A stretch of DNA of 64,000 bases, from positions 496,001 to 560,000 of IMG/VR virus record IMGVR_UViG_3300050122_000263; one strand, 5' to 3'. This document shows, in pieces, positions 5,366 through 59,555 of the stretch. A program made the position numbers and the translations under genes. Below the pieces are notes generated by a model that saw only the letters and a program-made list of their open reading frames with translations, searched no databases and had not been told where the DNA came from. Every line of letters begins with the position of its first letter. Within the stretch, counting starts at the first letter, position 1.

Positions 5366-5484
5366 TTGAAGTGAAGATTTTCCTCTTAAACGAGTTTGGC
5401 AGATTTGAGAGCTTCTCGTTAAATTCCGACTAGATTTAACGAGAAGCTCTTGATTGAGTCTGAAACTGTGATATTCGTAGTAGT

Positions 5485-6240: not shown

Positions 6241-6266
6241 AAACTTATCCTATACATATAGGATAA
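6238..6266. terminator. 3' hairpin between convergent HNH genes
   Basis: TAAAAAC then TTATCCTATA-ca-TATAGGATAA (6245-6266). Confidence 0.65.
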
Positions 6267-6277
6267 ACTTCGCTATG

Positions 6278-6649
6278 TCAAATAACTTCCAGAATTAAGG
6301 GAAGTCGTGCGGATTCGACAGCTTTATAGATCTCTCTGATTTTACATCTTGTTGATTTGTGACCATCTGGCCAAATGGTGTAACGAAGATTGTTCCGCCT
6401 GAAATCAAAACAGTCCCCATTAATATGCTGTACATACATGTGACTCTGACCAAAAGCCCTTTCGGCTATCACCTCTGCGAGAGGAACGGACTTAATTGAG
6501 GCATTTACATGATGTCCCTGTTGATTCAGAAAATATACCCAAATCTCGACGTTTACTTTTGTGCAGAAATGGTTTGGATCAGAGATCCAATTAAATATCA
6601 ACAAGTCACGGTCAACATCATCTATCTGTATTTCTCTTGGATTTTGCAT
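6278..6649 (-). CDS. HNH_3-like paralog 4
   Basis: IQIDDVDRDLLIFNW...VIAERAFG...VQHINGDCFDFRRNNLRY. Confidence 0.7.
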   Translation of the reverse strand: MQNPREIQIDDVDRDLLIFNWISDPNHFCTKVNVEIWVYFLNQQGHHVNASIKSVPLAEVIAERAFGQSHMYVQHINGDCFDFRRNNLRYTIWPDGHKSTRCKIREIYKAVESARLPLILEVI

Positions 6650-6821
6650 ATCTTTGTTTTAAAACAAAGATATCTTTATGGAGTTATTTATTTTCTTAAT
6701 AACGCCGGATATTGTGAGAGCGATTAGTATTTCATGAATAGATTCTACATCTGCCTGAATTCATAATTTCAGCCCGATTAAGCTGAAATTATGCGAAGAG
6801 CTTGGAGAAATTCGGAAGCTC

Positions 6822-7293
6822 TGGAGCTCCAGAGCGCTCAAGCCATTAAAGAGGCTGTACCAAAATTTTAACACTTAAGCTGAACTTTTTATTTTCACGA
6901 GTTCCCCTATTAAATTATTAATACATAGCGGATTGATACAGAAAAAGCCTTTCTGTCAAGTATAGAGACTAAAGCAAGAAAATTGCTCCGTGCTTGGGAA
7001 GAAGAAGATCACAGAGAGACGGTCTCTATATTGGACTATACAACACATTGTTACTAATAGTCTATAGTAGACAGTCATCGTCGTCCAGAGCACAGCGTCA
7101 GATGGTTAAAAATCTCCGAACATTTTTCGAAGGGCATGAGATCTTAAGGCTATATGATGAAATAGAACATAGAAAACAGATAATATATGTTGTGTTAACA
7201 TATATTAAGGCGAAATATATGTAAATAAAAAGTTCAGCTTAAGTGTTAAAATTTTGATACAGCACCTTTAACAGCTCAGCGCTCCAGAGCTTC
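6822..7293. mobile_element. MITE-like unit: about 70-bp terminal inverted repeats around a decayed ORF
   Basis: 6861-6894 is the exact reverse complement of 7223-7256 (34 bp), with imperfect extension to about 6822/7293. The interior has stop-interrupted frames. No target-site duplication was identified. Confidence 0.45.
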
Positions 7294-7599
7294 AACTCAG
7301 AGCTCAGAGCTCTCAAAACATGGATCCTATATTGTTCTATAGCACTGCTTAGAATTTCTAGACAATATAGAACTCAACTTCCAGGCTCCAGAAATACAGA
7401 TACATCTGTATTAAAATCGTATAGTTATGCTGGATTTCCTGAACATCATCCATTAATATACTCTCTAACATGATATCGGATATGAAATATGAGATAAAAC
7501 ACGCATTGTCAAGTTAGAGATAATACATATTGTGGATGAGAATAGAAATCTTATCAGATTTCTCATTTAGTTGTTCATTAGGGCTAAATCTTCAGGGAG

Positions 7600-7644
7600 A
7601 AAAAGTTCAGCTTAAGTGTTAAAATTTTGATACAGCACCTTTAA
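7600..7644 (+). repeat. Third copy of the repeat arm
   Basis: 45 bp identical to 7227-7271 (AAAAAGTTCAGCTTAAGTGTTAAAATTTTGATACAGCACCTTTAA). Confidence 0.9.
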
Positions 7645-7683
7645 TATTTTAGGCTCTGGGCAAAAGAACGTAGAACCGTTAAA

Positions 7684-9150
7684 ATGAATTATCTCAACGA
7701 ATTTGTAGAAAATATGTGTATATTAGATGCATCACAATGCACTGCCTGTAGAAACTTGCGCGATGCATACTTCTCTTACGTCCGTGAAAAATATAATATT
7801 GACCAATATGTTAGCGTGCCACTAATGCTCAAGTATATTCGAGTTATTTCCGCTGTATACCCCTCTATTACTATCCAGAAAAGAGTTGATGCTACATATT
7901 GTATGGGTATCGGACTCCAGGGTTATTCCATTGTTCCTAAGAGTCGAGATCTCCAGAAAATTAAGGAAAGAAAGATTCTTGTTAATATAGACGGCAGAAG
8001 TGTGGACGAAACCTATTATGATGGATATAATGAAGCCAAGCAAGAGGTCAAGAGACATCCTTATGCGAAAGACACTATCATGGCTGCCTGGACTGTTCGC
8101 AATCGTCTTGGTCTCAGCAAGGACGAGTTTAGTAAATGTCAGAAACTCAATTATTTTGAATGGATCTATGATAAATCAGGTAACATCGATGTTGAGCGAA
8201 CAATTGGGTCTTTAGCATTTAATATCAAGAGATATGGATTCAGGTTGCATAAACCTGAAGTCCAAAACCCTGAACATAAACTCCAAGAGGTTGAAAGTTT
8301 GTCAGAAATCACTATAGGTAGATTACTTGAGTCTAGTACTTCAATCAGATCGGTGGATGAAGAACCAATACCCATCGAGTCAGATTGGCGTTTTAATGCC
8401 AATGATGCCATCAGATTTGCCAGAGAAGCATATGCACGCACCATGATCGATGATGAAACAAATCGATTGGATAAAGTTCAAAAGTTGGTAGATCGGAGAC
8501 GGAGAAGAGCTAAAGGCTTGAAATCTAAGGTAAAGAGAGTTCCACGTCAAATTTATGCCGATCAGCCGAAAGCATTCGGACTTGTTTTCCAAATACTTCC
8601 ATCCTGGCAAATAGAAACAGGATTTGATGTTGTGCGGTTTTCATTCAAGTACATAGATCATCCAAAGGAGAAAGATTATGAGGAATCTAATTGGGGTCAC
8701 GATAAATTATGTATCAACGGTCATTCCCCGCTCAAAGATCAGAAATCAACATTAACAGAAGTCTGGACTCATTTTCGCCAGAATGATATCAGAGTCCGTA
8801 GACTTCGTATTTCTTGGAATATGCTTTCTACCCTTCCTATTATTAAGCTGATAGTTGAGTTGGATGATAAGGAAATAAATCTCATTCATGAGATTAGTGT
8901 AGAAATGGACTTTGGGAACAAAATGGAACCTCGTGACAGAGAAGAAGAATATGAGGAGGAGAAAGAACAAGAACATAATGAGGAAGCTGAAGATATTGAT
9001 GAATATGACAAGGAGCAAGAACGTGATGATGAGGAACAGTCAGAAATAATTGATTCTCTCAGAGCAATCTATTCACCGGCTCCAATCGCCAATTCACCCA
9101 GTTATATAACTTCTCGTCCCTCTCCCCTTATCTTCGAACTTATCGATTAG
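7684..9150 (+). CDS. Hypothetical protein with acidic C-terminal tract
   Basis: 488 aa ORF with AAAATG start context; no family recognised. Confidence 0.75.
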   Translation: MNYLNEFVENMCILDASQCTACRNLRDAYFSYVREKYNIDQYVSVPLMLKYIRVISAVYPSITIQKRVDATYCMGIGLQGYSIVPKSRDLQKIKERKILVNIDGRSVDETYYDGYNEAKQEVKRHPYAKDTIMAAWTVRNRLGLSKDEFSKCQKLNYFEWIYDKSGNIDVERTIGSLAFNIKRYGFRLHKPEVQNPEHKLQEVESLSEITIGRLLESSTSIRSVDEEPIPIESDWRFNANDAIRFAREAYARTMIDDETNRLDKVQKLVDRRRRRAKGLKSKVKRVPRQIYADQPKAFGLVFQILPSWQIETGFDVVRFSFKYIDHPKEKDYEESNWGHDKLCINGHSPLKDQKSTLTEVWTHFRQNDIRVRRLRISWNMLSTLPIIKLIVELDDKEINLIHEISVEMDFGNKMEPRDREEEYEEEKEQEHNEEAEDIDEYDKEQERDDEEQSEIIDSLRAIYSPAPIANSPSYITSRPSPLIFELID

Positions 9151-9183
9151 ATATCTGACATTATCAGATATCTCCATTTATAT

Positions 9184-9666
9184 TCACTTAACTTCTAAAT
9201 TACTAAGTAACTGTCTCATTTCAGAGATTTCCCGCTCTTGACTCTTAATAATTTCGTCCAGGATAGCAGTTAATCCAGGACTATTTTCCTTTGCCTTCTG
9301 ACGCTGAGCCATAGTAATAGCCATTTGGTGATGTTCAATCATGCCCAGCATAAACTGGCGCTGATCTATGCCAACTTGATCGACAATTAAGTATTCAGTA
9401 ACCAAGGCCAATAGTAGAAAGACAACAAATATCGTAAGATATTCAACTCCAACTTGGCGAGATAGCACCATATAACCACCCAGCTCGACCGCAACCATTA
9501 AGAAGGCCATCAATAGAGCACCGTATATTTTATTGAGATTATTGGTGCGATTGGTTGAAATCAACACAGACATAATAATATAGCCTATGATGAAGCTAGC
9601 CACAAACATAATAACAAGCATCCAGAGCAGATGCTGGGCTCCAGACATGCTGTGTGGCTCTTGCAT
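9184..9666 (-). CDS. DUF305-family (ferritin-like) membrane protein
   Basis: Three N-terminal TM segments, then FMLGMIEHHQMAITMA...IIKSQEREISEM, matching the DUF305 MIxHH...Q..EI..M pattern. Confidence 0.85.
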   Translation of the reverse strand: MQEPHSMSGAQHLLWMLVIMFVASFIIGYIIMSVLISTNRTNNLNKIYGALLMAFLMVAVELGGYMVLSRQVGVEYLTIFVVFLLLALVTEYLIVDQVGIDQRQFMLGMIEHHQMAITMAQRQKAKENSPGLTAILDEIIKSQEREISEMRQLLSNLEVK

Positions 9667-9733
9667 CTTTTACATTTTAATATATCTAACTAGATATATG
9701 TTACGGCTCCGGAGCACGTTCTGATGTATTAAC

Positions 9734-10252
9734 TCAAGCCTCTTCTTTATCCTTAGCGGCTGTATCAGAAACACCAACATTTCCAGCACTCTGTATTTGA
9801 GCCGGCTCAGCCTCTCGTATTATGCGCTGATAATCTTCATCGATGCGCCGACAGTAGCGCGCCAGATGTTTGCCGGCTTGTAGTAAGACATATGCTATCA
9901 ACGCCACTATAGCCAGAGCACAGCAGAACATGGCACCCACTAGCTCACACATAAACAGCTCATTCTTGGTGCATCCGGGATAGTTACCATGAGAGTCTTT
10001 GTCCCAGGTCTCCATAATCAACATGGACCAAAGTGCTCCAATCACAAACAAGATACCACAGATAAAGCCAGCTCCTAATATACCGCCTATAATCCATAGC
10101 AAATTACAGGCTAAACTACAACGAAAATCAGCACAATTGCACTCATCCAAGCAGACCCGCTTACAGGCGAAACAACAGCGAGCACAGCATTTCCGCGGTC
10201 TCGGCACAACAATGAGGTCCTCCTCATCCTGCAGCAGAGATACACTTTCCAT
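9734..10252 (-). CDS. Cys-rich two-TM membrane protein
   Basis: KCCARCCFACKRVCLDECNC precedes two hydrophobic helices. Confidence 0.75.
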   Translation of the reverse strand: MESVSLLQDEEDLIVVPRPRKCCARCCFACKRVCLDECNCADFRCSLACNLLWIIGGILGAGFICGILFVIGALWSMLIMETWDKDSHGNYPGCTKNELFMCELVGAMFCCALAIVALIAYVLLQAGKHLARYCRRIDEDYQRIIREAEPAQIQSAGNVGVSDTAAKDKEEA

Positions 10253-21200: not shown

Positions 21201-22178
21201 TCAGCGCCCGAAAGGCTCAGCACACTCAACAGCCTGATCGATCCTGCCTGGCCTAACCAGGGCTTCCATATTAGGAGCTGTCAGGAATTCTCTCACATTG
21301 CTGGTCAAGATAACGAGACAGCGGGTGGGAAGGCGTGACGGTCCATCTATGGCACTTAGGATACCTCCGATGGAGACCCGTTTCGGCTTATCAACCAACT
21401 GTTTGTCAATCTCGTCAAAGACGACGATAGAGGAGGGAGGAATAGAGTTGATGAGATTGGTTAGAGCGCTGTCACACATCTTCTCGTGATTGAGAGTGAT
21501 ACAGTAGACGGACATGTTGTACATAGCAGCGATAATGCCGGGTAATGCCGACTTGCCAGTGCCTGGGGGACCATATAGGAAATAGCCCCGGCGATAGGGT
21601 CTACCTGTCACTAGGTATCTATTGGCACTACCCATGAATTCGGCCACATCAGTCAGCACATGTCTCATGCTGACCGTGTGAGTGGCTGGATTAAGAGCCA
21701 GCACTGGACGAGGCGCTGGGAAGGCCCAAGCATCTCCATTGGACATGTAGTAATAGAGTAGCTGAGCAGCATTATTACTCTGTCCATAGATATGGGTAAC
21801 AGCATTGCGCAGAAATAGTCTCTTTGAGGCAGTCTGAAAAGGTCCCTTCCAGATCCAGATTATGATTTTCTCTGCTTCAAGCTTGATGTGCAATGTTACC
21901 CCTTGATGCTTGACTGTGTAGCGACCAAGTCCAAAAGTGAAGTTAGGCGCATCCCCGTTGCCGTCCTGGATATCTGTTGCCTGATTGGGAATCTCCCTCT
22001 TCAAGAAATTCAAGATAGCATAAACTGTCTTGGGGTTCTGTGCTATAATGCATGAATATTCTACAGTGAAGAGACTAGCTATTAAGTCCAACAATCTCTG
22101 AAATATGTTCTTGGCTTGATCACCGCCAACGGTGAGAGCTGCCGAAGCACCTATCGCCACTGCCACTGCGCCACTCAT
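21201..22178 (-). CDS. BCS1-like AAA+ ATPase
   Basis: PYRRGYFLYGPPGTGKS (Walker A), SIVVFDEID (Walker B), GILSAIDG, ILTSN, ALVRPGRID. Confidence 0.92.
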   Translation of the reverse strand: MSGAVAVAIGASAALTVGGDQAKNIFQRLLDLIASLFTVEYSCIIAQNPKTVYAILNFLKREIPNQATDIQDGNGDAPNFTFGLGRYTVKHQGVTLHIKLEAEKIIIWIWKGPFQTASKRLFLRNAVTHIYGQSNNAAQLLYYYMSNGDAWAFPAPRPVLALNPATHTVSMRHVLTDVAEFMGSANRYLVTGRPYRRGYFLYGPPGTGKSALPGIIAAMYNMSVYCITLNHEKMCDSALTNLINSIPPSSIVVFDEIDKQLVDKPKRVSIGGILSAIDGPSRLPTRCLVILTSNVREFLTAPNMEALVRPGRIDQAVECAEPFGR

Positions 22179-24924: not shown

Positions 24925-26355
24925 TTATGGGGCTATATAGACCAAGCTGTCGAAGCTGGTAGTTCTATCTCTCACATCCACCAGCTCTGTGACTATTTGG
25001 TGGGAACCTGGCATGTGAGTGAAAACAATAATGTCATATCCCAATTCTTTGCCTAACAGACATAGATCCCTGTCAAAACTATCTTCACTCGCGTAGAAAC
25101 CCAATAACTGCCCCATATAACGCTTGCGTTGTGGCAGACGAGCTATCTCCTCCTCTGTGAAAGATCTATTATAAAGCTGGAGTGGCCCACTGATCTTGTG
25201 TAACTTGTTATGACGATCCATCTCCTTAGTGTAAGCTGCCACTTCTAGAGGTGTCATCATCAGATCATCTGGCAGCCGTGGTAGCTGGCTCAGCTTCTTG
25301 CCGGCTGCGAAATCTCGGTAACCAAGACTGTAGGCTAGAAAGCTTTCATCAAATCCGTGAATAATGTGTTCCTCCTCGGATGGTGCTGTAACTCCTTCAA
25401 TATAGGTTTTGTGACGCCCCAACATAGCTTCCATCTGCAACATAGCGACCAGTTTAGTGCGAGCAATTAGAGCGCGCCGGAAAGCTAGGTAGGTGCTAGA
25501 CTCTGACTCCAAGTTCCCGGTTAGGGAACTAGGGGCTTCCCCAGACATATACGTCGGGGGAAGCTCCACATAATAAAAGGTGCCACAGAAACTTCCGCCA
25601 GATTGAGATGGACCATGATAGAGACCCCGACTCATACCTGCAGCATAACGGGTGACGGGAACCAGTTGCCATTCCATCCCATTCAACTCAGCCTTGAAAT
25701 AAATGTCTGTGGGAATGATCTGTGTAGAATTAATAACCGAAGCCCCTGGAGTGCGGAAAATAGACATATCGGTGACAGGGCGCTTGCTCCGCTTATATAC
25801 ACGGTCTGGCGCAAATAATAGCAAAGGCAGTGAATTAGCTGTCTCGCCAGCTTCTCGGATAAGTTCGGCTACAGTACAATAGCGCCATCTGGGCCACTGT
25901 CGCAAAGTGAGGCTCTCATCGCTATCTGGGTCACTTAGGTCAGGTAATGTGGGAGCAAATGTGTACCAGAACTTTATCTCCTCTCTTGTCAATCCATTGA
26001 GGCGATCCTCTAGATAGAGCGTATTGAGTTCGGCTATAGTGGTTACGCCTTCTCCATAGCTCGGTAAGTAATCGTTACTCTCCTCCTCGGTGGGAAGTTC
26101 TGGTAAGAAACCGGCTCTCACAAAGGCCACAGCATCGGGAATTGAGCGCACGTTAAACAATAGGCATTGTTTAGCATCGCTAAGTTGTTGAGCTAGCAGA
26201 GCTCGGATCTGCTCTGCAAAGGCTGGAATGTCTGTGATGTCTCCATAATAATGACGCCCCTCTGCATCAATGGTGCCGATGGGAATCAACGGTTTAGATG
26301 TCAGCTCCTCTTCTTCCTCCTCAAAAGAGACAGATTCATTGAAAGACTCTTGCAT
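24925..26355 (-). CDS. Paralog family A member 1 (PVTRY...GTFYY...GYD...QIVTE; putative ART-like fold)
   Basis: Clear colinear similarity to 36026-37132 and 47871-49058. Confidence 0.8.
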   Translation of the reverse strand: MQESFNESVSFEEEEEELTSKPLIPIGTIDAEGRHYYGDITDIPAFAEQIRALLAQQLSDAKQCLLFNVRSIPDAVAFVRAGFLPELPTEEESNDYLPSYGEGVTTIAELNTLYLEDRLNGLTREEIKFWYTFAPTLPDLSDPDSDESLTLRQWPRWRYCTVAELIREAGETANSLPLLLFAPDRVYKRSKRPVTDMSIFRTPGASVINSTQIIPTDIYFKAELNGMEWQLVPVTRYAAGMSRGLYHGPSQSGGSFCGTFYYVELPPTYMSGEAPSSLTGNLESESSTYLAFRRALIARTKLVAMLQMEAMLGRHKTYIEGVTAPSEEEHIIHGFDESFLAYSLGYRDFAAGKKLSQLPRLPDDLMMTPLEVAAYTKEMDRHNKLHKISGPLQLYNRSFTEEEIARLPQRKRYMGQLLGFYASEDSFDRDLCLLGKELGYDIIVFTHMPGSHQIVTELVDVRDRTTSFDSLVYIAP

Positions 26356-36025: not shown

Positions 36026-37132
36026 ATGGAGTGTAATCCAGAACAAACAGATGTTATTGTGTCTGAACAGACCACTGAGACAGTTTTACAGGTCACAGAT
36101 ATAGAGCAGTTTAAGCAAACTCAGAAACAGCTGGACGAATTGGGGAAATCTTCAATTATTGTCGAAGTTAAGTTGAAGGCACCCTGGAGAGAGTTTATTA
36201 AGGCCGGGTTTCTTCCACTAATCGGTCACGGGGAATTCACTGAATGTAGCGGTATGGCTCTACAAGCTTGCAATGTTGGATTAACTGCAAGAATGGCTCT
36301 AGGGTATTTGCTATCTGGCTATACTGAACCGGAAATGGATTTCTACATCGGAGATCATTGGCGTGAAGTGGCTGATTTCCAACAATGGGGTCGCTGGCAG
36401 TTCTGCGCGCTAGAAAGCTGGTATGCCCAAGCTATGACCGATTGCCAATCCCTCCCAATCATTCTGTATGGAAGGGCTGGGGATCTCTACACTAAATCTC
36501 AGCGGCCTCGTACTGATATGTCTCTCTTTCTACCATTGACCCTTTCTACACCCCCCTCTTACAAGCAGGAGGAAGATTGGCAGTTAGTTCCAGTCACTCG
36601 TTACGCTTCAGGAATGAGTAGAGGCCTCTTCCATGAGGAAGACAATACTAGGCAATTTGGTACTTATTACTACAAAGAAGAGGAATCAACTATCTTCTTG
36701 CGCTATAAGCGAGCTCTGATTGCCAAGAACAAATATGAAGCAGCTAAACAACTGGGCGTAGAAGCAGAGAGGTATTTGAACGGAGAGAAAACAGCCAAAG
36801 CTTGGTATCGAGGAGAAATTCCAACACCAGCCGATCTAATGATGACTCCGATAGAGATGTATGATTGCACTCTAACACAAGACAGGGATATCCTAGGAAA
36901 CTGTAACGAGCTCTGCAAGCAAATTTCCCAAGATAAGCGATATGCTGGTCTCTTCTTGGGTCTCTATGCTGCGGAGGATGATCTGGATGGAATTTTGTAT
37001 GATCGGGCTAAGAAGGCCGGTTACGATATAGTCATATTCTCAGCAATTGGCTCTCATCAAGTTGTTGAGGAAGTATTGGATGTACGACCTCGAGCAGAAT
37101 CCTTCTCTCATCTAGTCAGATGCTCAGAATAA
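36026..37132 (+). CDS. Paralog family A member 2 (putative ART-like)
   Basis: VPVTRYASGMSRGL...FGTYYYKEEES...GYDIVIFSAIGSHQVVEEVLDVR. Confidence 0.8.
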   Translation: MECNPEQTDVIVSEQTTETVLQVTDIEQFKQTQKQLDELGKSSIIVEVKLKAPWREFIKAGFLPLIGHGEFTECSGMALQACNVGLTARMALGYLLSGYTEPEMDFYIGDHWREVADFQQWGRWQFCALESWYAQAMTDCQSLPIILYGRAGDLYTKSQRPRTDMSLFLPLTLSTPPSYKQEEDWQLVPVTRYASGMSRGLFHEEDNTRQFGTYYYKEEESTIFLRYKRALIAKNKYEAAKQLGVEAERYLNGEKTAKAWYRGEIPTPADLMMTPIEMYDCTLTQDRDILGNCNELCKQISQDKRYAGLFLGLYAAEDDLDGILYDRAKKAGYDIVIFSAIGSHQVVEEVLDVRPRAESFSHLVRCSE

Positions 37133-47870: not shown

Positions 47871-49058
47871 TTAAGCGATGTACAGTAAGCACCGGAAGCT
47901 CTCGTCTCGTGGCCTCGCATCCAAAACCTCTGTCACTATTTGGTGAGACCCCACCATATGAGTCAGAATGAGAATATGCAGCCCAGCCTCCTCGGCCATA
48001 ACCGCGAGGCTTTGGTCGAATTCATCTTCCTGCGCAAATAAGCCCAGCAGCATGCCGGCATAGCGAGCTGTGGTTGCAATACGTGGCACTAATTGCCGCT
48101 TGCTCTCAGGGAAGTTAACTCCTTTGTATGTCTGGATCTGCTCTGGTGTCATAATCAAATCCTCAGGCATTCCAACCATGTGTTTCTCATGTGCCATCTC
48201 ATCATCCAGCTTGTCCATGGCTGTCTCCTTGTTGCGGAAGGTTCTGGCTCGCTGATAGAGTAGGAAGGTGGTCGATTCTGGCTCGTAATAATAGAATGTC
48301 CCTTTGAAGTCGTCTACATTCTCATTAAAATAAAGACCTCGGTTCAGAGCGCTGGCATAGCGAGTGACAGGGATACAGAAGCATGTTTCAGCTTGTGGTC
48401 CGTTCAAAGTCACAATGTATTCGTATTGATTGATTTGAGTGAGTTGCTCTCGCTTGGCTGTTAGTGAGTTGATAGTTCGGAACATAGCCATATCGTTTCT
48501 AGGTCGCCGACTGCCTGTGTAAACAAGCTCAGGGGCATACATTAACAGAGGTAGTGAGTCAGCCGTTCTTAGAGCATGTTGCCGCCAATATTCAACAGTG
48601 GCGAAGATCCAAACCTTACTACAAAGGGCCAACTTCTTAGGATCCCCATACCAGAAAATGTTCTCCTCCTCCGTCATGCCATGCAGAATAAGCCCTTCAA
48701 TCACATCACTGTTCTTTTCCGGTAGGAAACCAGCCCTGGCCATCTCCAGATTATTATCTACATAGAAGTTGGTTGTGTGACAGCGTATCATCACCAGTTT
48801 GTGTTGCTGCATAAGAGCCCCAACCTCCGTGAAGAGCCTTTGCACATTGAGCTGTGCAAAGAGAACAGGGTAACAAAAGGTATCGTCCTGCCGGATAAGG
48901 TGACTGTCGACATCATAAGCAACAGTCAAATCAATGGTACCGATGCTGGGCGATGTGGCATCCACCACGATTTCGCTCATTGTGTGAGGTTCTGTGGTCA
49001 CAATGTTGAGAAATAAGGCAGCTGCAGTTCGAGCTCGTTTGTTAGACATATTTTTCAT
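47871..49058 (-). CDS. Paralog family A member 3 (putative ART-like)
   Basis: IPVTRYASALNRGLY...FKGTFYYYEPES...THMVGSHQIVTEVLDAR. Confidence 0.8.
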   Translation of the reverse strand: MKNMSNKRARTAAALFLNIVTTEPHTMSEIVVDATSPSIGTIDLTVAYDVDSHLIRQDDTFCYPVLFAQLNVQRLFTEVGALMQQHKLVMIRCHTTNFYVDNNLEMARAGFLPEKNSDVIEGLILHGMTEEENIFWYGDPKKLALCSKVWIFATVEYWRQHALRTADSLPLLMYAPELVYTGSRRPRNDMAMFRTINSLTAKREQLTQINQYEYIVTLNGPQAETCFCIPVTRYASALNRGLYFNENVDDFKGTFYYYEPESTTFLLYQRARTFRNKETAMDKLDDEMAHEKHMVGMPEDLIMTPEQIQTYKGVNFPESKRQLVPRIATTARYAGMLLGLFAQEDEFDQSLAVMAEEAGLHILILTHMVGSHQIVTEVLDARPRDESFRCLLYIA

Positions 49059-51068: not shown

Positions 51069-52046
51069 TTAGCGTGAGTTGAAGGTGAAAGAAACATCTT
51101 GTTTGTTATTGATGTACTTGAAGCGGCCACCCACCCAAATAGGAGTTCCTTCCACTTTGATCTGCATGGCCTTTAGGAAGTCTAGGATTGAGCGAATGAA
51201 GTTGAAGGTATAGATGTTGCCAGGACACTGTACTCCTGTCGGACCAAATGCCTTGTTGTTAGCGTTGTTAACTAGATCTCGATTACGATGCATAAAGACC
51301 AGCTGGCCATCAGATCCTCCTGTGTGGAAGATGGAGAATTGGGCCACCGCGATCAGGAAGTCGTTCTCCTCCAGACCAGCCATATCGCCCTTCCTATTGA
51401 GGATGGCTTTGGTAAAGTTATCCAACAAAGCCAGTTGTGGCACAAAGACCAGGAAACGCAGGTGACCTGGCAGGGAGCGAATAATACTCGACAGCCTGAA
51501 GACATTGCCAATATTACGGAAGAACACAGAAATACCAGTGATGAAGTCACCACGTAACACCGTCACTATACCACGCAGCACGACCAGGAGTTGGATCATT
51601 TCCTTCTCTACCTCATTGTCAACGATACCAAAGGCTCGATTCGTCTCGATCAGGATGGATTTGGATAGGAAATCCTCAAACTCCTCAATAGTGAGCTTCT
51701 TCTCATTGATATCGTGGAAGTAGTGACGCATATCAATACCTTTAGCTTTCTCTCCCTGCACGCGAAGTAGATCTTTCCTGACTTTATCTGGTAGTACGAT
51801 GCCCATACCAGAGAAGAGCTTGAACATCTCAATGAAGAAGCCAGAGGTGTAGATGTAGGTCTCATCCCGATCTGTCACCCAGTCGCGATCATCCTTGTAG
51901 CCTATGCCGAAGAAGGCAGCAGCCTTAGGGTGCTTATACAGATAGTCGAAGCCAAAACTCAGAATATAGAAGCGAAAGGGCTTGTAGAAGGCATACAGAG
52001 TAAGAAAAGCCACCACACTTGCTAGAAACCAGGTTAGCAGGGACAT
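51069..52046 (-). CDS. Short, divergent cytochrome P450-like protein
   Basis: N-terminal TM anchor; C-terminal AFGPTGVQCPGNIYT resembles the FxxGxxxCxG heme-thiolate motif at the expected position; no ExxR motif; only 325 aa. Confidence 0.6.
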   Translation of the reverse strand: MSLLTWFLASVVAFLTLYAFYKPFRFYILSFGFDYLYKHPKAAAFFGIGYKDDRDWVTDRDETYIYTSGFFIEMFKLFSGMGIVLPDKVRKDLLRVQGEKAKGIDMRHYFHDINEKKLTIEEFEDFLSKSILIETNRAFGIVDNEVEKEMIQLLVVLRGIVTVLRGDFITGISVFFRNIGNVFRLSSIIRSLPGHLRFLVFVPQLALLDNFTKAILNRKGDMAGLEENDFLIAVAQFSIFHTGGSDGQLVFMHRNRDLVNNANNKAFGPTGVQCPGNIYTFNFIRSILDFLKAMQIKVEGTPIWVGGRFKYINNKQDVSFTFNSR

Positions 52047-52179: not shown

Positions 52180-53223
52180 TTACACATGAACTTGCCCAGT
52201 CTCTAACGAGATCATATCAACTGCGGAGTTCGATTCAGTCAAGGTCTCATATGGTTCCTTACGCTCTCCCTTGATCCAAAGCGCCACACTCAGCAAACTA
52301 GCCACCAACGCGGGGATCATAATGTAGAGCGGATAATCAAGCCCTGGGTTAAGGTCTGGGAAGACAGAGTAGAAGATAGCAGTGGAGGGATTGACGATCG
52401 AGGTTGAGATCATGTTATAGTTGGTACTGATGGCATTGAGATAGACAGCTGCCACGAATAAACAGATGTAGGAAGCAGTGAATATCTCAAGCAGCAATGT
52501 AGGTACCAGTTTATGTACAAAGATGTCGCCACTGTCCCTGAAGGCTATTATAATATTGTCGGAGTAGCCGAAGAAGATATCAAGCCAGGAGAAGGCTACC
52601 ACTACCACGAACTGTACCAGACGGATGTAGAAGACTAGGCGTATCATGTTAAGGAAGCTGCCATCTCGGGTGTCAGTGATGTATTTCTCCTGCATCACAT
52701 TATGCCCGCTGCGGAAGGTGGTACCTATGGTGAAGATAGCAATCCAAAGGATGGAGGATGGGCTCCAATGAGAATAGATGGGAATAATTGAGATACCTAC
52801 GGAGGTGAACAGAAAAATTAGGCTCGGCACTATATACCACTTCTCATAGAAGACATTCTTCTTCAAAATATATTTAGTCATAATGATACTGGGGATGACA
52901 GCCAAGCCAGGTAGGATAGATTGCACCACAGCAGGGGTACGGATCGGATTAGCCGCATATAATGTGAAGATGCCGGCAAATGCATTACAGAGCCCTGCTA
53001 TCAATATAGTCTTCTTCTCTGGGACTCGCAACAGCTTCCAATCCTTGCGAGCCAAGAACAAGAGAATAAGGCCGAAGACAATACAGAAATGCGCCCCAGA
53101 GACTAGGATAACGAAGATCATGGATGGAAACATCTGCGCCAGAAATGTTACAATAATGCGCTGTGTAGCCCCAGTGATGCTGACGGCGAAAACCAGAAAT
53201 GCAATTCTGCGAGTTGCATCCAT
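52180..53223 (-). CDS. CRT-like (chloroquine-resistance-transporter family, DMT superfamily) transporter 1
   Basis: About 10 TM; AGLCNAF...YAANPIRTPAVVQSIL...IPSIIMTKYILKK...VMQEKY. Confidence 0.8.
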   Translation of the reverse strand: MDATRRIAFLVFAVSITGATQRIIVTFLAQMFPSMIFVILVSGAHFCIVFGLILLFLARKDWKLLRVPEKKTILIAGLCNAFAGIFTLYAANPIRTPAVVQSILPGLAVIPSIIMTKYILKKNVFYEKWYIVPSLIFLFTSVGISIIPIYSHWSPSSILWIAIFTIGTTFRSGHNVMQEKYITDTRDGSFLNMIRLVFYIRLVQFVVVVAFSWLDIFFGYSDNIIIAFRDSGDIFVHKLVPTLLLEIFTASYICLFVAAVYLNAISTNYNMISTSIVNPSTAIFYSVFPDLNPGLDYPLYIMIPALVASLLSVALWIKGERKEPYETLTESNSAVDMISLETGQVHV

Positions 53224-53294
53224 ATTTACGCGGTACTAATATACAAGATTGTTTAAAAGTGAAGCTGGCTCAAATTTTCTTGTCACTTTTAAAG

Positions 53295-54119
53295 ATGCAC
53301 ACAGATTACATTGCTGACGCAGTAGTCAAGAGCCGCGTCTATCCGGTGTCACTCAGCATTCTCTTTATCGGCCAGTTTCTGATCTTTGCTGGTGCACTTT
53401 GGGTCGCTGATGTTTTGCTAACCACTGTTTTCCACGGTCTGGATGGCTATAATGGACGCATGTATTCTTATCTGCTGATTCATATTCCCTTCATCTTTGT
53501 CGTGAGTGGTGTGAGGCAATGGGCTTGGTACTTGCTGACCTTTGTTCACGGTATCGCCCACGTAACCCACCCTGCCCTTTTTGGTGTAGTCTTCAACACC
53601 AATTATACACCTCTGTATGACTACATCGTGCATGCAGCACAATGTCTTTGTGTGTGGTACTGGAACCAGGACCATTTCCCCATCGGCGTGATGACCAGCC
53701 AACTCATGCTAACCGGTGCTGCTATCGCCCATGTGCACCAACCCTTTTTGCAGACATTCCTCTGGATTGTTATCTCTGGCTTTGGCGTTTATGGTACCCA
53801 ATACCATATGCAGCTTCTCAATGTCAAGAAACATCATCATATCTTCGTCTGTGGTTGGATCATCTGGCTGTCACCCTACCTCGGCTATCTTGTGCCAGGT
53901 CGCCTGCCTGAGTGGGACGCTGTCACCAACTACATCGGCCTATTTCGTGTTTGGTTTGTTGCCTTTTACCTGACCATGATCTCGGTTGGACAACATGATC
54001 CACTTGATGAAGCCAGAGAGGATCAGAGTATGCAGATTCAGCAGGGCAAGCGTGTAATCAGTTTCATCCAAACAGACACAGCCCCTGTTGAGGGTGACAG
54101 CAAGATCAAGGCAAATTAA
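53295..54119 (+). CDS. His-rich polytopic membrane protein of unknown family
   Basis: AAAGATG start at 53295; about 7 TM; HGIAHVTH, DYIVHAAQ, AHVH, QYH, HHH. Confidence 0.75.
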   Translation: MHTDYIADAVVKSRVYPVSLSILFIGQFLIFAGALWVADVLLTTVFHGLDGYNGRMYSYLLIHIPFIFVVSGVRQWAWYLLTFVHGIAHVTHPALFGVVFNTNYTPLYDYIVHAAQCLCVWYWNQDHFPIGVMTSQLMLTGAAIAHVHQPFLQTFLWIVISGFGVYGTQYHMQLLNVKKHHHIFVCGWIIWLSPYLGYLVPGRLPEWDAVTNYIGLFRVWFVAFYLTMISVGQHDPLDEAREDQSMQIQQGKRVISFIQTDTAPVEGDSKIKAN

Positions 54120-54275: not shown

Positions 54276-55391
54276 ATGACTGCTGAAGTTGATGTGAAGT
54301 CCGGCCAGTTTGTGGCCTTGGCTATTGCCGTCATTACCCTCAATATGTTTCAGAGCATTGTTATCCCATTAGCAGCTCAATACTATACATGTCTCTACTT
54401 TATTTGTTTGATCACAGCTGTTGAGTTCTGTATAGTTATGTTTGTTGTTTTTATTTCGGTTAGACGTTACAATACTGGTAGCTGGACATTAGGGCCGATG
54501 CGAGCCAGGAAGACAGTTATCCTCTCCGGTATTTTTAATGCCTTAATGTCTATTATACTAGTGTATTGCTCAAATCCAGCGCGTACTCCTGTTATCATCC
54601 AATCTATCTTCACAGGCTTGGTTATTCTGCCCAGTGTTCTTTTCACCCGCATTGTGCTTAAGAAACAGGTCGTCTATGACAAACGCTTTATTATACCTAG
54701 CCTACTACTTTTAGCTGCCTCAATCGCCATCCCAATCGCGGGCATGGGAGCTGAAGGAACCTGGGCATCCTCCAATATCTACTGGAGCTCAGCCTATCTG
54801 TTTGGAGTAGTCTGCCGCAGTTACTTCAGCATCCTTCAGGAGAAGTATTTTGTTGAGACACAGGATGGCAGCATTGAGAATAAGCTCTCCTTAACTTTCT
54901 ATACTAGATTGGTGCAGCTTGTTGTTGTACTGGCTTGTTGCTGGCTAGAGTGGGTGGTTGGCTACACCGATCATCCCATCACCGCTTTCGGCGAGAGTTT
55001 TATGGCCATGTGGACTCAAGCGATAGGAGCTGCTCTGCTACAAGGCTTCATTGCTGCCTATCTCATTAACTATGTGTTGTCTATCTACCTCAATGCCATC
55101 AGCACCAACTACAGCATGATTATCTCAACGGCAGTGACGCCTGCTCTTGCTCTTTTCTTCGTTATCATACCAAGCCTCAATAATGGGCCTAAATGCAGCG
55201 TCGCTTTTGTTCTTCCAGCTCTGGCATGCTCCATTACTAGTGCTGTACTCTGGATTCTGGGTGAGAAGAAGACAGGCTACCAGATCATTGATAACAAAGG
55301 CATCAGTCCACCGGCCTCATTTGAAGGGACAATCGATCATATGAGTAAGATCTCAATTAACACAACATCTATTAGGAATGAGTCTGCCTGA
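54276..55391 (+). CDS. CRT-like transporter 2
   Basis: SGIFNAL...YCSNPARTPVIIQSIF...LPSVLFTRIVLKK...ILQEKY...YLNAISTNY; paralog of 52180-53223. Confidence 0.8.
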   Translation: MTAEVDVKSGQFVALAIAVITLNMFQSIVIPLAAQYYTCLYFICLITAVEFCIVMFVVFISVRRYNTGSWTLGPMRARKTVILSGIFNALMSIILVYCSNPARTPVIIQSIFTGLVILPSVLFTRIVLKKQVVYDKRFIIPSLLLLAASIAIPIAGMGAEGTWASSNIYWSSAYLFGVVCRSYFSILQEKYFVETQDGSIENKLSLTFYTRLVQLVVVLACCWLEWVVGYTDHPITAFGESFMAMWTQAIGAALLQGFIAAYLINYVLSIYLNAISTNYSMIISTAVTPALALFFVIIPSLNNGPKCSVAFVLPALACSITSAVLWILGEKKTGYQIIDNKGISPPASFEGTIDHMSKISINTTSIRNESA

Positions 55392-55462: not shown

Positions 55463-56971
55463 TTAATAGAGATAAGGGATGAGACGGTAGGGAACTGTCT
55501 CACAGTATTTGTGCCAAGAGAGGCCATACTTCTTGGCACAACGGGCTTCATCACGGTAACAACGGATGACTAGCAAGATGATCATGTAGATACAGTAGAA
55601 ATAAGGGATGATGCTGTCTGAGCCACAGGCTAAGCAATAGGCTGTTGACAGGATAATATCCCCTGTGTAGTTCATGTGACGGGCTACGCCCCATAGACCC
55701 TCAACCAGGAGTTTGCTCTCGTGGCAGCCAGACTCAGTTGTGTAGCTACACAGTACATGCTGCTGTCTGGCCTGTTCCTGCGGAGTTGAACGTCTGAAAC
55801 AGTCCTTCTGGCTATTGGCGACTCGGAAGATGACGTAACCCAGCAGTCCCAACAGTAGGATGGAAAAGAACTTAGAGTTACCGAGCGTGACTGGATGGTA
55901 GCTGAGATACTGAGCCTGTATAGTATAGGTGAAGGGCAACCAGACACAGTCTCCCCAAGCTAGCACCCAACCAAAGTGGTCATGGGCGATATCAATAGTG
56001 CGCAGATACCAATTCTCATTGAAGAAAAAGTCAAGCACATAGATAGCCTGTAATATATTAACCAGAACCATGGAGTCTGAGACATAACCGTAGCGCTTAG
56101 CTTGGGCTGCTGCAAAGGAGATGTTGATGAGAGTCCAGGCGATAATACCTGGTCGCCCGTTGAAAAAGAGCTTGAAATCCAAGTTGCCAATACGCGGGTT
56201 AAACTCGACGCCCATAATGAAATCATACACAAAGCTGCCTGAGTATTTATTATCACGTGGATGAGTTGGGGCATAATGGGCTTTTAGGTAAGACATAATG
56301 GACAACAAAAGACCGGTGATATTAGCTACAAGGAAGAGAGCCATCCAATTGTCCGCGATCCAAGTCACAGACAAGATACTGTAATAGCAGAGCATGACGA
56401 AGGTGATGTGAGTGATGAGCCAAGCCTGCAGCCCGTTAATATTGTAATAGAGCAGATGACCGGCAGGAGTTAACTGCCCCTGTTTGTGACCACCAACATA
56501 GCTAGGCGTCAGCTTATGTAAGCCATCAGGCAGCACAGCCAATAGAGTTTGCCAGGCAAACCAGCCAATTAGGGTGATTGTGACTGAGCCTATAGTATCT
56601 CTGATGTGAACGATGTCCAGGTAGCTGAGATTGTCTGAATTGGAGAGTTGGCTGTTCTCTGTAACAGCTACGAGGTGATCACCTCGCGACGATCCTGGGC
56701 TCAGGCCCAGGATCGGTACGAAATTCAACAGATTCTCGGCGAATGGCAGGAGATGATCATTTACACAGAGCATGATAAGACACAGGGCCAAGCCAGGCAC
56801 CCAAATGAACATAAGTAATACACCGCGTACAGTCAGCTTGCTTGGGCTATCGCAGCGGCCCCACGTCTTCTTCCCTATAGCATTAGTATTGCCTGTGGCT
56901 GGGGTAATATTGATATTCGAGCGAGAAGTGAAGTCTCCAGCACAGTCGCTATATGGAACATTAATGGACAT
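55463..56971 (-). CDS. DHCR7: 7-dehydrocholesterol (sterol delta-7) reductase, ERG4/ERG24 family
   Basis: GVEFNPR...DFKLFFNGRPGIIAWTLIN...DFFFNENWYLRTIDIAHDHFGWVLAWGDCVWLP...WGVARHMNYTGD...RDEARCAKKYG...VPYRLIP. The RTIDIxHDHFGW signature is DHCR7-type. First ATG at 56971. Confidence 0.95.
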   Translation of the reverse strand: MSINVPYSDCAGDFTSRSNINITPATGNTNAIGKKTWGRCDSPSKLTVRGVLLMFIWVPGLALCLIMLCVNDHLLPFAENLLNFVPILGLSPGSSRGDHLVAVTENSQLSNSDNLSYLDIVHIRDTIGSVTITLIGWFAWQTLLAVLPDGLHKLTPSYVGGHKQGQLTPAGHLLYYNINGLQAWLITHITFVMLCYYSILSVTWIADNWMALFLVANITGLLLSIMSYLKAHYAPTHPRDNKYSGSFVYDFIMGVEFNPRIGNLDFKLFFNGRPGIIAWTLINISFAAAQAKRYGYVSDSMVLVNILQAIYVLDFFFNENWYLRTIDIAHDHFGWVLAWGDCVWLPFTYTIQAQYLSYHPVTLGNSKFFSILLLGLLGYVIFRVANSQKDCFRRSTPQEQARQQHVLCSYTTESGCHESKLLVEGLWGVARHMNYTGDIILSTAYCLACGSDSIIPYFYCIYMIILLVIRCYRDEARCAKKYGLSWHKYCETVPYRLIPYLY

Positions 56972-57124
56972 TGCAGCTGTTTGCAACTTTCTTACGATCT
57001 CTCCACTACAATTGGCTGATCAGTTCTCGCTTCTTTCGCTGTTGTCATAGAATTAGCACTATGATTATGACTGATATAAAGTTATATCAGTCAGATTAAA
57101 GTCGTACTAGAAACAACCTAGATA

Positions 57125-57955: not shown

Positions 57956-59395
57956 TTAATTGTAAGTGTATTTCTCGAGCTTCCAACCGCTAACCAACAG
58001 CTCTGAGCTCTGCAACATGATGTTAGGAAGTGCTATTTTCGGCTCTTCCCGGGGCAGAAATGAGCCATAGATATGAACTGGATTGTTGCGAAGATACGGC
58101 TCATTTTCCTCTTGAGGTAATAGCTGTAAAGTTCCATAATCCCCATCATCGATTCTATATATTTTAGGATCTGGACACCATGATGATGTTACTTGTAATA
58201 TATCACTAGGTCTCTCGATAACTCTTACCCTATTATCCCAACATCGCAGATGGTGGGAGAGAGCCGTACAACCACCAATATTAGGAGGCATCAATTGAGG
58301 TAGAGTACCAACCATAACATATAACGGGCGCTCATGATACTCAGGCTTTTCAGGGAGTGGAAGATTGAGATATGTCACCTGAGCCTCCTCTTCTGCCTTA
58401 CGGACCGACAGGTTACGTATGACTAGCTCTGGTTGATCATCAAGCCAACCAAAGATTATGTTCATATCGAGTTGCACTCTATTGCTCTCCCAGGCGAGAC
58501 GCTGTTCATCATACATGATGCGGACTGGCAACTGACACCATCCATTCCAAAAATTTTGACTTATCTGTTGGCATGTCTTACAAAGACGCCTGAAGCGAGC
58601 AAGCTCGTGTATAGAAAGGTAGCCGAGGATCTCAGCGATGATAGGTTTGAGCAACAACATCCAGAGCTCATTTCGAGCATTCAGTTGATTGCGTAGATAA
58701 TATCTTGCAGTCCATCCCTCAGGCGTAGCTTGGGTATCATTACATGTGAAATTGGGAAGTTGTAGCAATTCTTCAACACATGGGGTAAGATCAGCATGTA
58801 TAACTCGCATGGCAAAACTAGGTACATTGCAAGACCTCCCGGTAAAAAGGGTCTTAATTGGAATAGTTGCATCGATATCCCCTTCTGTATACATTTTCAC
58901 TATCTGAACAGGCTCTGTCTTGGTTATCATCTTTACCACTCTTATTTGATTAACGGTGATAGAGTCGCGAGTTACACGACATTGATGATATGTTTGTATA
59001 AAATCATCAGTTATCACGGTTTCATAGCGCTGTAACCCCGCACGATAGAATTGAGGAAGGGTACCCTCAATGACCGACAGATTATGCGCTTTATCATTGA
59101 AGATGTCCATATTCCAGTAGCGCTTGATAAGCTCCATTTTGTTCGGGCTCCAACCATAGACAAGCAGAGTAGTGTCATAATACAACCAGTTAAAACTGGG
59201 AATTGTGAGCCAATAATAAATGCGGACGGGAAGAATCTGCCATTGCTGCCATAAGGTCTGAGCCTGTTGGCAGAACCATTTACATGTTTTTCTTAGATTA
59301 GCTAGATGGTATGGCCCAAGTTGTGACAGCAGATGTTGAACAGTCTTCTCCTCAAAGTTGGCCCATAACAGAGGAATGATTATCCCTGCGTCCAT
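57956..59395 (-). CDS. Tandemly duplicated F-box-like protein
   Basis: LLSQLGPYHLANLRKTCKWF...WQILPVRIYY and ILGYLSIHELARFRRLCKTC...WCQLPVRIMY. First ATG at 59395. Confidence 0.7.
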   Translation of the reverse strand: MDAGIIIPLLWANFEEKTVQHLLSQLGPYHLANLRKTCKWFCQQAQTLWQQWQILPVRIYYWLTIPSFNWLYYDTTLLVYGWSPNKMELIKRYWNMDIFNDKAHNLSVIEGTLPQFYRAGLQRYETVITDDFIQTYHQCRVTRDSITVNQIRVVKMITKTEPVQIVKMYTEGDIDATIPIKTLFTGRSCNVPSFAMRVIHADLTPCVEELLQLPNFTCNDTQATPEGWTARYYLRNQLNARNELWMLLLKPIIAEILGYLSIHELARFRRLCKTCQQISQNFWNGWCQLPVRIMYDEQRLAWESNRVQLDMNIIFGWLDDQPELVIRNLSVRKAEEEAQVTYLNLPLPEKPEYHERPLYVMVGTLPQLMPPNIGGCTALSHHLRCWDNRVRVIERPSDILQVTSSWCPDPKIYRIDDGDYGTLQLLPQEENEPYLRNNPVHIYGSFLPREEPKIALPNIMLQSSELLVSGWKLEKYTYN

Positions 59396-59555
59396 CACAA
59401 CTTTCACAACACTTCGTTCACAACATGTTAATCATTGTCCTCTACTCAACACATTTATCTACCTACAAATAGAGTCAAACTTAAACAGGAGACTTAATCA
59501 ATCGATACTTCATAACATTACCTATTGCGAAGATACGCCATATATGGTGCATTTT

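What the first reader, a model, noticed from the sequence alone, without database searches (positions are those of the whole stretch)
51069..52046. Minimal 325-aa P450-like protein lacking ExxR
Seen: TM anchor plus AFGPTGVQCPG about 50 aa from the C-terminus, but 100-150 aa shorter than usual P450s, with no ExxR and no clear I-helix AGxxT. Known: giant-virus P450s exist and are divergent. Inference: a stripped-down heme-thiolate protein, either peroxide-driven or a non-catalytic sterol binder.
Basis: partly seen in the sequence, partly recalled or inferred. Interest (0 to 1): 0.6.

Follow-up and report, generated by a model that had tools for sequence, protein, structure and literature searches.

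The report
Giant-virus mini cytochrome P450-like protein
This giant-virus gene encodes a membrane-anchored protein that is predicted to fold like a cytochrome P450 about 100 residues too short, keeps the haem-binding cysteine loop, and sits in a gene cluster with other membrane proteins and a sterol reductase that recurs in distant viruses.

Summary
The ORF at 51069-52046 (-) is real. It encodes 325 aa with an N-terminal hydrophobic anchor and a single cysteine, C274, inside AFGPTGVQCPG, 51 residues from the C-terminus.

It belongs to a small family found so far only on giant-virus-type contigs: 85 clusters among 1.84 billion proteins, typically 320-360 aa. No sequence method links the family to P450. 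Pfam gave 0 of 50 members at E<=10, a family profile found nothing in PDB, and hhalign was insignificant.

The only invariant columns in 50 members are F267, G268, C274 and P275. The classic Arg/His two residues before the Cys, the I-helix AGxxT and a conserved K-helix ExxR are missing. All of the length deficit lies N-terminal of the K-helix region.

New here: the gene recurs beside a His-rich 7-helix membrane protein. A further multi-pass membrane protein and an ERG4/ERG24 sterol reductase join them in some loci.

Best reading: a reduced, probably haem-thiolate P450 working in a viral sterol or lipid module. Haem binding is untested.

The parts
51069..52046 (-). Gene for the 325-aa mini P450-like protein (P0001)
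   Evidence: ORF. Single copy in the 582-kb virus record. Family of 85 representatives. AF2 model pLDDT 84.7 with only P450 matches.
51984..52046 (-). Residues 1-21: N-terminal hydrophobic membrane anchor, followed by a conserved K-P-x-R-F-Y hinge
   Evidence: Hydropathy. Helix 3-20 in the model. A hydrophobic N-terminus scored in 45 of 50 members by a crude test. Consensus YKPxRFY.
51456..51467 (-). Residues 194-197 (GHLR): position of the K-helix ExxR by spacing, 80 aa before the Cys; degenerate in the family and lacking the Glu here
   Evidence: Column counts. Spacing of 70-85 aa in 13 canonical P450 controls. The assignment is by spacing only, not by superposition.
51219..51257 (-). Residues 264-276, N-K-A-F-G-P-T-G-V-Q-C-P-G: Cys-pocket-like loop; the C274 codon is 51225-51227
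   Evidence: F267, G268, C274 and P275 are invariant; N264 is 49/50; G276 is G in 43 and A in 7 of 50. The best local hhalign path pairs F, G, C and G with FGxGxHxCxG of canonical P450s, but this is not significant (E 0.2).
51168..51218 (-). Residues 277-293: helix directly after the Cys loop, in the position of the L helix; strands follow to the C-terminus
   Evidence: DSSP on the model: H277-293, E294-299, E319-324. Structural alignments run to residue 325 and to the end of the P450 chains.
53199..54119 (+). His-rich 7-helix membrane protein, the conserved neighbour of the mini-P450. The likely true start is the ATG at 53295, because relatives are about 210-240 aa.
52180..53223 (-). Multi-pass membrane protein (347 aa), member of a third family that recurs in the cluster
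   Evidence: 39% identical to the product of 54276-55391. Homologues lie inside the cluster in L023, L030, L031 and L032. No Pfam family.
54276..55391 (+). Paralogue (371 aa) of the multi-pass membrane protein
55463..56986 (-). ERG4/ERG24-family sterol reductase
   Evidence: PF01222 at E 2.4e-100. The closest solved chain is a Delta14-sterol reductase, 4quv, E 4.6e-72. Also found next to the cluster in L023 and L032.

Best explanation
The gene encodes a member of a small family, seen so far only on giant-virus-type contigs, of N-terminally membrane-anchored proteins of about 320-360 aa. They are extremely divergent, shortened relatives of cytochrome P450.

Shown: the predicted fold is P450. 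The part from the K-helix region to the C-terminus (about 130 aa) has normal P450 length and order. The Cys-pocket loop, with F at Cys-7, G at Cys-6, the Cys, and G/A at Cys+2, is the most conserved feature. All of the length deficit (about 90-160 aa) lies between the anchor and the K-helix region.

Inferred: C274 ligates haem iron as a thiolate. The lost segments include much of the D-to-H region, meaning the F/G 'lid' and B' helix, which would leave an open distal face towards the membrane. There is no I-helix acid-alcohol pair and no Arg/His at Cys-2. Oxygen activation is therefore unlikely to follow the textbook proton-relay route. The enzyme would either take electrons from the host's ER reductase with substrate-assisted chemistry, or use a peroxide or hydroperoxide substrate as CYP74, CYP8A and CYP152 do (named from memory). 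I cannot choose between these.

The gene works with its conserved neighbour, a His-rich 7-helix membrane protein, which may be a metal or haem site. In several viruses a multi-pass membrane protein and an ERG4/ERG24 sterol reductase join them. The likely substrate is therefore a membrane sterol or another lipid of the infected cell.
For: Fold:
- AF2 model pLDDT 84.7, pTM 0.80.
- Every Foldseek PDB row listed (ranks 1-49) is a P450.
- ESM Atlas: 29 of 30 feature neighbours are P450 clusters (score 0.91). Its own model matches a P450 at TM 0.60, and my model matches a CYP20A1-like cluster at TM 0.66 over 301 residues.
- BFVD: a 45%-identical Edafosvirus protein is named 'Cytochrome P450 (Fragment)' (E 5.6e-26). 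The next hits are viral P450s.

Cys loop:
- The only invariant columns in 50 members are F267, G268, C274 and P275.
- On reading the printed sequence, C274 is the only cysteine.
- A helix at 277-293 follows the loop directly.
- Cys to C-terminus is 51 aa, against 48-91 in 13 canonical P450s.

Real, selected gene: there are full-length ORFs in many contigs down to 18% identity.

Linkage:
- The His-rich family sits within 3.5 kb of the mini-P450 in 10 of 11 loci. This includes 6 of 7 loci fetched through the His-rich protein alone.
- ERG4/ERG24 is in 3 clusters, and a CYP51-like canonical P450 is in one.
Against: - No sequence method detects P450 homology: Pfam 0 of 50 at E<=10, a family profile against PDB found nothing, and hhalign gave E 0.2-0.5.
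- 0 of 50 members match PROSITE PS00086, against 11 of 12 controls.
- Cys-2 is V/F/L/M instead of Arg/His.
- ExxR is degenerate and there is no AGxxT.
- Five members carry 1- to 8-residue insertions inside the Cys loop.
- The virus record holds no P450 reductase FAD domain, no cytochrome b5 and no canonical P450. It is estimated to be only 61% complete.
- Both structure predictors were trained on P450 structures.
- I had no model coordinates. Superposition of C274 on the proximal Cys, the existence of a haem cavity and the identity of the missing helices are therefore inferred from element order and spacing only.
- Three mini-P450 loci lack the His-rich neighbour within 3.4-10 kb.
Confidence: 0.5

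Rival explanations
1. A P450-fold protein that no longer binds haem or catalyses anything. It would act as a membrane-anchored lipid or sterol binder, or as a scaffold or chaperone for its membrane-protein neighbours. Haem-free P450 homologues that assist glycosyltransferases are a precedent (named from memory).
For: Several canonical P450 features are lost: Arg/His at Cys-2, PS00086, conserved ExxR, AGxxT and about 100 aa of the distal half. No redox partner is found in the record. The neighbours are conserved membrane proteins.
Against: The Cys loop is the most conserved element of the family, with four invariant columns all inside it. To my knowledge, the known haem-free P450 homologues have lost the Cys. 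A pure binder has no obvious need for an invariant F...C-P-G loop.
Confidence: 0.25
2. An ordinary class II monooxygenase that is merely compact. It would use host NADPH-P450 reductase and O2 to hydroxylate or demethylate a sterol, for example in a step next to the Delta14-reductase.
Against: There is no acid-alcohol pair and no Arg/His at Cys-2. The region that normally encloses the substrate is about 100 aa short.
Confidence: 0.2
3. Not a P450 relative at all. The fold prediction would be an artefact triggered by a chance FG...C.G motif, or the ORF would be a truncated fragment or pseudogene of a normal P450, as the database label 'Fragment' on a relative might suggest.
For: No significant sequence similarity to P450s by any method.
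Against: AF2 and ESM independently give the same fold with high confidence, and the structural hit list is exclusively P450. The family has complete ORFs of consistent length (median 333 aa) with their own N-terminal anchors and stops, so the shortness is native and not truncation.
Confidence: 0.05

Closest known systems
[not shown]
   Same: The overall fold aligns over about 250-290 residues. There is an N-terminal ER-type anchor. The Cys loop keeps F at Cys-7, G at Cys-6 and G/A at Cys+2, followed by an L-type helix and C-terminal strands. Cys-to-end and K-region-to-Cys spacings are normal.
   Different: It is 70-170 aa shorter, with the whole deficit before the K region. It has no HMM or profile similarity, fails PS00086, has a hydrophobic residue instead of Arg/His at Cys-2, has no AGxxT, and its ExxR is degenerate.
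UniProt A0A3G4ZT11, 'Cytochrome P450 (Fragment)', Edafosvirus sp. (BFVD)
   Same: Same family: 45% identity, E 5.6e-26, TM 0.79-0.84, rmsd 2.5 over 280 columns. The P450 label therefore already exists for a relative.
   Different: That record is flagged as a fragment (305 aa) and, as far as I could find, is uncharacterised. Here the family is shown to be natively short and complete, and to have a conserved gene neighbourhood.
Smallest solved P450s, e.g. CYP231A2 of Picrophilus torridus (2rfb) and CYP119 (1f4t, 1io8)
   Different: Chain numbering in the hit list reaches 352 for 2rfb and target lengths are 359-367 for CYP119. Both are soluble (from memory). Here the globular part after the anchor is about 300 aa, roughly 50 residues smaller, and the standard motifs are missing.
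Atypical P450s that do not run the standard O2/proton-relay cycle: CYP74 allene-oxide synthase/hydroperoxide lyase, CYP8A1/CYP5A1, CYP152 peroxygenases. Also CYP157, which lacks ExxR.
   Different: These are full-length and recognised by P450 HMMs. The comparison of their chemistry rests on my memory of the literature and was not tested here.
Canonical giant-virus P450s (Mimivirus, Tupanvirus, Pandoravirus, Yasminevirus and others)
   Same: Same hosts and virus phylum, and the same fold class. They are weak Foldseek hits at E 4e-3 to 0.6. One canonical, CYP51-like P450 sits inside the cluster in L030.
   Different: Those are 400-575 aa and match PF00067. The record holding this window has none.

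Membership tests
Cytochrome P450 superfamily | P450 fold (helical domain with the I and L helices around the haem, plus the N- and C-terminal sheets) | tested here: met
   [not shown]
Cytochrome P450 superfamily | Invariant cysteine (fifth haem ligand) in a loop directly before the L helix, about 50 aa from the C-terminus | tested here: met
   C274 is invariant in 50/50 members and is followed by helix 277-293, 51 aa from the end. That it superposes on the proximal Cys was not checked at coordinate level.
Cytochrome P450 superfamily | FxxGxRxCxG / PROSITE PS00086 signature | tested here: not met
   0 of 50 members match, against 11 of 12 controls. F, C and the last G/A are kept, the middle Gly is shifted by one position, and Arg/His at Cys-2 is replaced by V/F/L/M. 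PMC3990721 states that only the Cys is invariant in P450s.
Cytochrome P450 superfamily | ExxR in the K helix, 70-85 aa before the Cys | tested here: inconclusive
   At that spacing this protein has GHLR. The family has E/D in 23/50 and R/K in 39/50. The literal ETNR at 134-137 is at the wrong distance. Exceptions such as CYP157 are known.
Cytochrome P450 superfamily | I-helix (A/G)Gx(D/E)T(T/S) oxygen-activation motif | tested here: not met
   0 of 50 members. The strict motif was found in only 5 of 12 bacterial controls, so its absence is not disqualifying.
Cytochrome P450 superfamily | Match to the Pfam p450 model (PF00067) or other significant sequence similarity | tested here: not met
   No hit at E<=10 for any of 50 members. 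The family profile finds nothing in PDB. hhalign against 4-13 P450s gives E 0.2-0.5.
Cytochrome P450 superfamily | Binds haem b; the reduced CO complex absorbs near 450 nm | not testable with these tools
   Needs expression and spectroscopy.
Viral mini-P450 family (defined here by alignments A1/A3) | About 320-360 aa, N-terminal anchor plus KPxRFY, invariant N-x-x-F-G...C-P-G/A, near-invariant R60, Q97, E124, E134 and N314 | tested here: met
   P0001 scores 475 bits against the family profile and carries all of these residues.

The most novel reading that the evidence does not exclude
The mini-P450, the His-rich 7-helix membrane protein and the multi-pass membrane protein, often with an ERG4/ERG24 sterol reductase, form a self-contained virus-encoded membrane module that remodels host sterols or lipids. 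The mini-P450 would be the smallest functional haem-thiolate P450 known: lidless, with its open distal face on the bilayer. The His-rich partner would be a previously unknown metal- or haem-containing protein that supplies electrons or substrate, in place of the usual reductase.
Probability: 0.15. Interest if true: 0.85.

Novelty: new variant of a known kind. Interest (0 to 1): 0.62.

Why it matters
If it binds haem, this family would set a new lower size limit for a working P450. It would show which parts of the fold are dispensable, which is useful for enzyme minimisation and for understanding P450 evolution.

It also shows that giant viruses carry P450-type proteins that standard sequence annotation misses. 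In this search 0 of 50 members matched Pfam, so surveys of viral P450s undercount them.

The recurring cluster with a sterol reductase and two unknown membrane-protein families points to viral manipulation of host membrane sterols or lipids. It also gives two orphan membrane families a testable functional context.

Tried and rejected
**Sequence-level homology to P450**
- Pfam gave nothing on P0001 or on 50 members at E<=10.
- phmmer and a family profile against PDB found nothing relevant.
- hhalign of the family against 4, 12 and 13 canonical P450s was insignificant, with E 0.2-0.5 and probability below 2%. A run with -M 50 gave a spurious alignment and was discarded; global mode failed. The P450s came from plasmids pNGR234a, pNL2 and pRHL1, from phage-like contigs and from L030.

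**Extra domains:** the longer members (448-605 aa) have no Pfam domain in their extensions, so there is no informative fusion.

**Paralogue in the window:** the other 325-aa ORF (21201-22178) is an unrelated AAA ATPase.

**Complex prediction:** mini-P450 plus the His-rich protein plus haem returned 'no answer', score 0.00. This is evidence neither for nor against binding.

**Searches that could not run or found nothing**
- A genome-contig scan with the sterol reductase found no relatives.
- Plasmid accessions NC_004808 and NC_003903 are not held.

**Mimivirus early-promoter octamer AAAATTGA:** not enriched, 2 found against 3.7 expected.

**Literature**
- Lamb et al. 2019 (PNAS, viral P450s) and Lamb & Waterman 2013 are not held.
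- There is no paper with both Edafosvirus and P450.
- I could not check whether this short family has been given a CYP name.

**Reads:** only peat metagenome DNA runs hold the gene, and no RNA run does.

**Not possible:** model coordinates are not exposed, so I could not make a residue-level superposition, check for a haem cavity or name the missing helices.

Full report
**What is in the sequence.** The minus-strand ORF 51069..52046 encodes 325 aa.
- Residues 1-21 are the most hydrophobic stretch (19-residue hydropathy mean up to 1.89). They are followed by K-P-x-R-F-Y, which is conserved in relatives.
- AFGPTGVQCPG occupies residues 266-276. C274 (codon 51225-51227) lies 51 residues from the C-terminus. 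On reading the printed sequence it is the only cysteine.
- No AGxxT-type motif is present.

**Where it comes from.**
- The window is bases 496001-560000 of a 582,007-bp IMG/VR virus record. The record is estimated 61% complete and is labelled provirus. It has 46.6% G+C.
- The record has an NCLDV major capsid protein and D5-type primase-helicases.
- The window is densely coded with ORFans, F-box proteins and an AAA ATPase.
- It is therefore a giant virus of the Nucleocytoviricota.
- The gene is single-copy in the record. It occurs in several peat metagenome runs, and no RNA run holds it.

**It is a real, conserved gene family.**
- A word-based search found 20 relatives at 37-65% identity.
- An exhaustive profile search of 1.84 billion representatives found only 85.
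- Complete members are 283-384 aa with a median of 333. Three longer ones have extensions without Pfam domains.
- The contigs examined carry NCLDV-type genes such as D5/AEP primase, family-B DNA polymerase with an intein, translation factors and ankyrin repeats.
- In an alignment of 50 full-length members (18-65% identical to P0001) the only invariant columns are F267, G268, C274 and P275. N264, R60, Q97, E124, E134 and N314 are at least 96% conserved. G276 is G in 43 and A in 7.

**Sequence methods do not see a P450.**
- Pfam finds nothing for P0001 or for any of 50 members at E<=10.
- The family profile finds nothing in PDB.
- The best local path does put F, G, C and G of the loop in register with FGxGxHxCxG, and the following helix on the L helix. 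I count this as a consistency check, not as evidence.
- None of the 50 members matches PROSITE PS00086, whereas 11 of 12 controls do.

**Structure says P450, and nothing else.**
- AlphaFold2 on the 20-sequence alignment gave pLDDT 84.7 and pTM 0.80.
- Every Foldseek PDB row listed (ranks 1-49) is a P450, at modest E-values of 3e-4 to 5e-3.
- The ESM Atlas gives P450 clusters for 29 of 30 embedding neighbours, independently of my model. Its own model matches a P450 at TM 0.60.
- My model matches a CYP20A1-like cluster at TM 0.66 over 301 residues.
- Among viral models, the top hit is a 45%-identical Edafosvirus protein already named 'Cytochrome P450 (Fragment)'. It is followed by canonical viral P450s.

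**What is kept and what is missing.**
- In 13 canonical P450s used as controls, the Cys lies 48-91 aa from the C-terminus and the K-helix ExxR lies 70-85 aa before it.
- Here Cys to end is 51 aa. Position 194-197, 80 aa upstream, reads GHLR. The family has E/D in 23/50 and R/K in 39/50 at those positions, within a consensus P-E-x-x-R-L-L-x-x-V-P-Q-L.
- The K-region-to-C-terminus part therefore looks full-sized, with a decayed ExxR.
- The N-terminus-to-Cys distance is 274 aa, against 345-437 in the controls.
- About 173 residues follow the anchor where canonical P450s use about 290-335. This is my arithmetic from the values, taking the K-helix position by spacing.
- From the order of predicted elements, my best guess is that the F/G/H 'lid' and the B' helix are lost and the D helix is shortened. 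The order is short helices, strand 48-52, helices 70-79, 87-103 and 107-113, strand 117-119, helices 120-139, 144-166, 168-177, 179-191 and 194-217, a hairpin, the Cys loop, and helix 277-293.
- That guess is inference. I had no coordinates and could not superpose residues.
- Within the loop, F at Cys-7, G at Cys-6 and G/A at Cys+2 match P450 usage. The central Gly is shifted by one position, and the Arg/His at Cys-2 is V/F/L/M. From memory, that Arg/His normally contacts a haem propionate.
- Five members have 1- to 8-residue insertions in the loop.
- According to PMC3990721, only the Cys is invariant across P450s, and ExxR has known exceptions such as CYP157.

**A conserved neighbourhood (new).**
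- The ORF at 53199-54119 (+) has relatives of about 210-240 aa, so its likely start is 53295. It encodes a multi-pass membrane protein with invariant HGxxH, D, VHAAQ, YHM and P-x-W-D motifs.
- Its homologues lie next to the mini-P450 in divergent viruses.
- Of 11 loci carrying this protein, 10 carry the mini-P450 within 3.5 kb. The exception is a 2.8-kb contig that ends 367 bp after the gene.
- Of the 7 loci fetched through the His-rich protein alone, 6 contain the mini-P450. Conversely, 4 of 7 loci fetched through the mini-P450 contain the His-rich gene, while L001, L004 and L024 do not.
- A third family comprises the paralogous multi-pass proteins at 52180-53223 and 54276-55391. It lies inside the cluster in 5 loci.
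- ERG4/ERG24 sterol reductase (window 55463-56986) flanks the cluster in the window, in its close relative L023 and in L032. It matches PF01222 at E 2.4e-100, and the nearest solved chain is a Delta14-sterol reductase.
- L032 is the most telling case. Its mini-P450 is no closer to P0001 than about 40% identity, since only P0002 and P0003 reach 65%. It carries the same gene families as the window, on one strand, in the order reductase, His-rich, multi-pass, mini-P450.
- In L030 a canonical 491-aa P450 whose best PDB matches are CYP51s (E 4e-29) sits between the mini-P450 and the multi-pass gene.
- L031 has two tandem mini-P450 copies.

**Mechanism, with shown and inferred steps.**
- Shown: P450-type predicted fold, anchor, invariant Cys loop, normal C-terminal half, missing N-terminal/distal mass, and conserved gene neighbours.
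- Inferred: haem-thiolate ligation by C274, an open active site next to the membrane, a sterol or lipid substrate, and cooperation with the His-rich protein.
- The source of oxidising equivalents is open. It could be host reductase, a peroxide or hydroperoxide, or the partner.
- The record has no cytochrome b5, no reductase FAD domain and no canonical P450. It has one FA_hydroxylase gene far away, at record bases 287448-287867.

**Probabilities.** I put about 0.9 on 'P450-fold relative', about 0.6 on 'binds haem through C274' and about 0.4 on 'acts on sterols or lipids with its neighbours'.

**Novelty.** The kind (P450) is known, and one relative already carries that label in a database. The following appear undescribed in the literature I could search:
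- the native shortness;
- the loss of most signature motifs while the Cys loop is strictly kept;
- the restriction to giant-virus-type contigs;
- the conserved partner genes.

The key survey of viral P450s was not available to me. I rate this a new variant of a known kind.

No alternative genetic code was used, and read laying was not used.

Noticed in passing
window 53199-54119 (+); relatives in L002, L025-L032: An orphan family of His-rich 7-helix membrane proteins with invariant HGxxH, D, VHAAQ, YHM and PxWD motifs. It has no Pfam family and no clear structural relative. Eighteen relatives were found, almost always beside the mini-P450.
   Followed up: yes
window 52180-53223 (-) and 54276-55391 (+): Two paralogous (39% identical) multi-pass membrane proteins without a Pfam family. 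Homologues lie inside the same cluster in L023, L030, L031 and L032. They could be a transporter, but this was not tested.
   Followed up: partly
window 55463-56986 (-): An ERG4/ERG24 sterol reductase of 507 aa. The Pfam match starts at residue 164, so there is an N-terminal extension of about 160 aa of unknown nature. The closest solved chain is a Delta14-sterol reductase.
   Followed up: partly
L030 2317-3792 (-): A canonical 491-aa P450 (PF00067) inside the cluster of another virus. Its best PDB matches are CYP51 sterol 14-demethylases, but only at E 4e-29, so it is CYP51-like rather than a clear CYP51.
   Followed up: partly
L031 1791-2774 and 3050-4111 (-): Two tandem copies of the mini-P450 gene in one virus contig.
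   Followed up: no
L023 6916-7170 and 7331-7654 (-); 5838-6419 and 6597-6866 (-): In the closest relative's contig, the His-rich gene and one multi-pass paralogue each appear split into two ORFs. This may reflect a frameshift, a pseudogene or an assembly error.
   Followed up: no
window 47871-49058 (-), 24925-26355 (-), 36026-37132 (+): Three paralogous ORFan proteins (30-36% identity) without a Pfam family, forming a multigene family within the window.
   Followed up: no
window 2972-4291 (-) and 57956-59407 (-): F-box domain proteins, typical of amoeba-infecting giant viruses.
   Followed up: no
window 1-1140 (+): An ORF open at the window's 5' end, with a weak BclA C-terminal domain match below the Pfam cut-off (25.2 bits against 38).
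   Followed up: no
window 4001-10000: G+C drops to 0.37-0.40, against about 0.46 elsewhere in the window.
   Followed up: no
G000 C1:287448-287867 (-), outside the window: A fatty-acid hydroxylase / sterol desaturase superfamily gene (PF04116, E 4.4e-13). It is another lipid-oxidising enzyme in the same virus.
   Followed up: no
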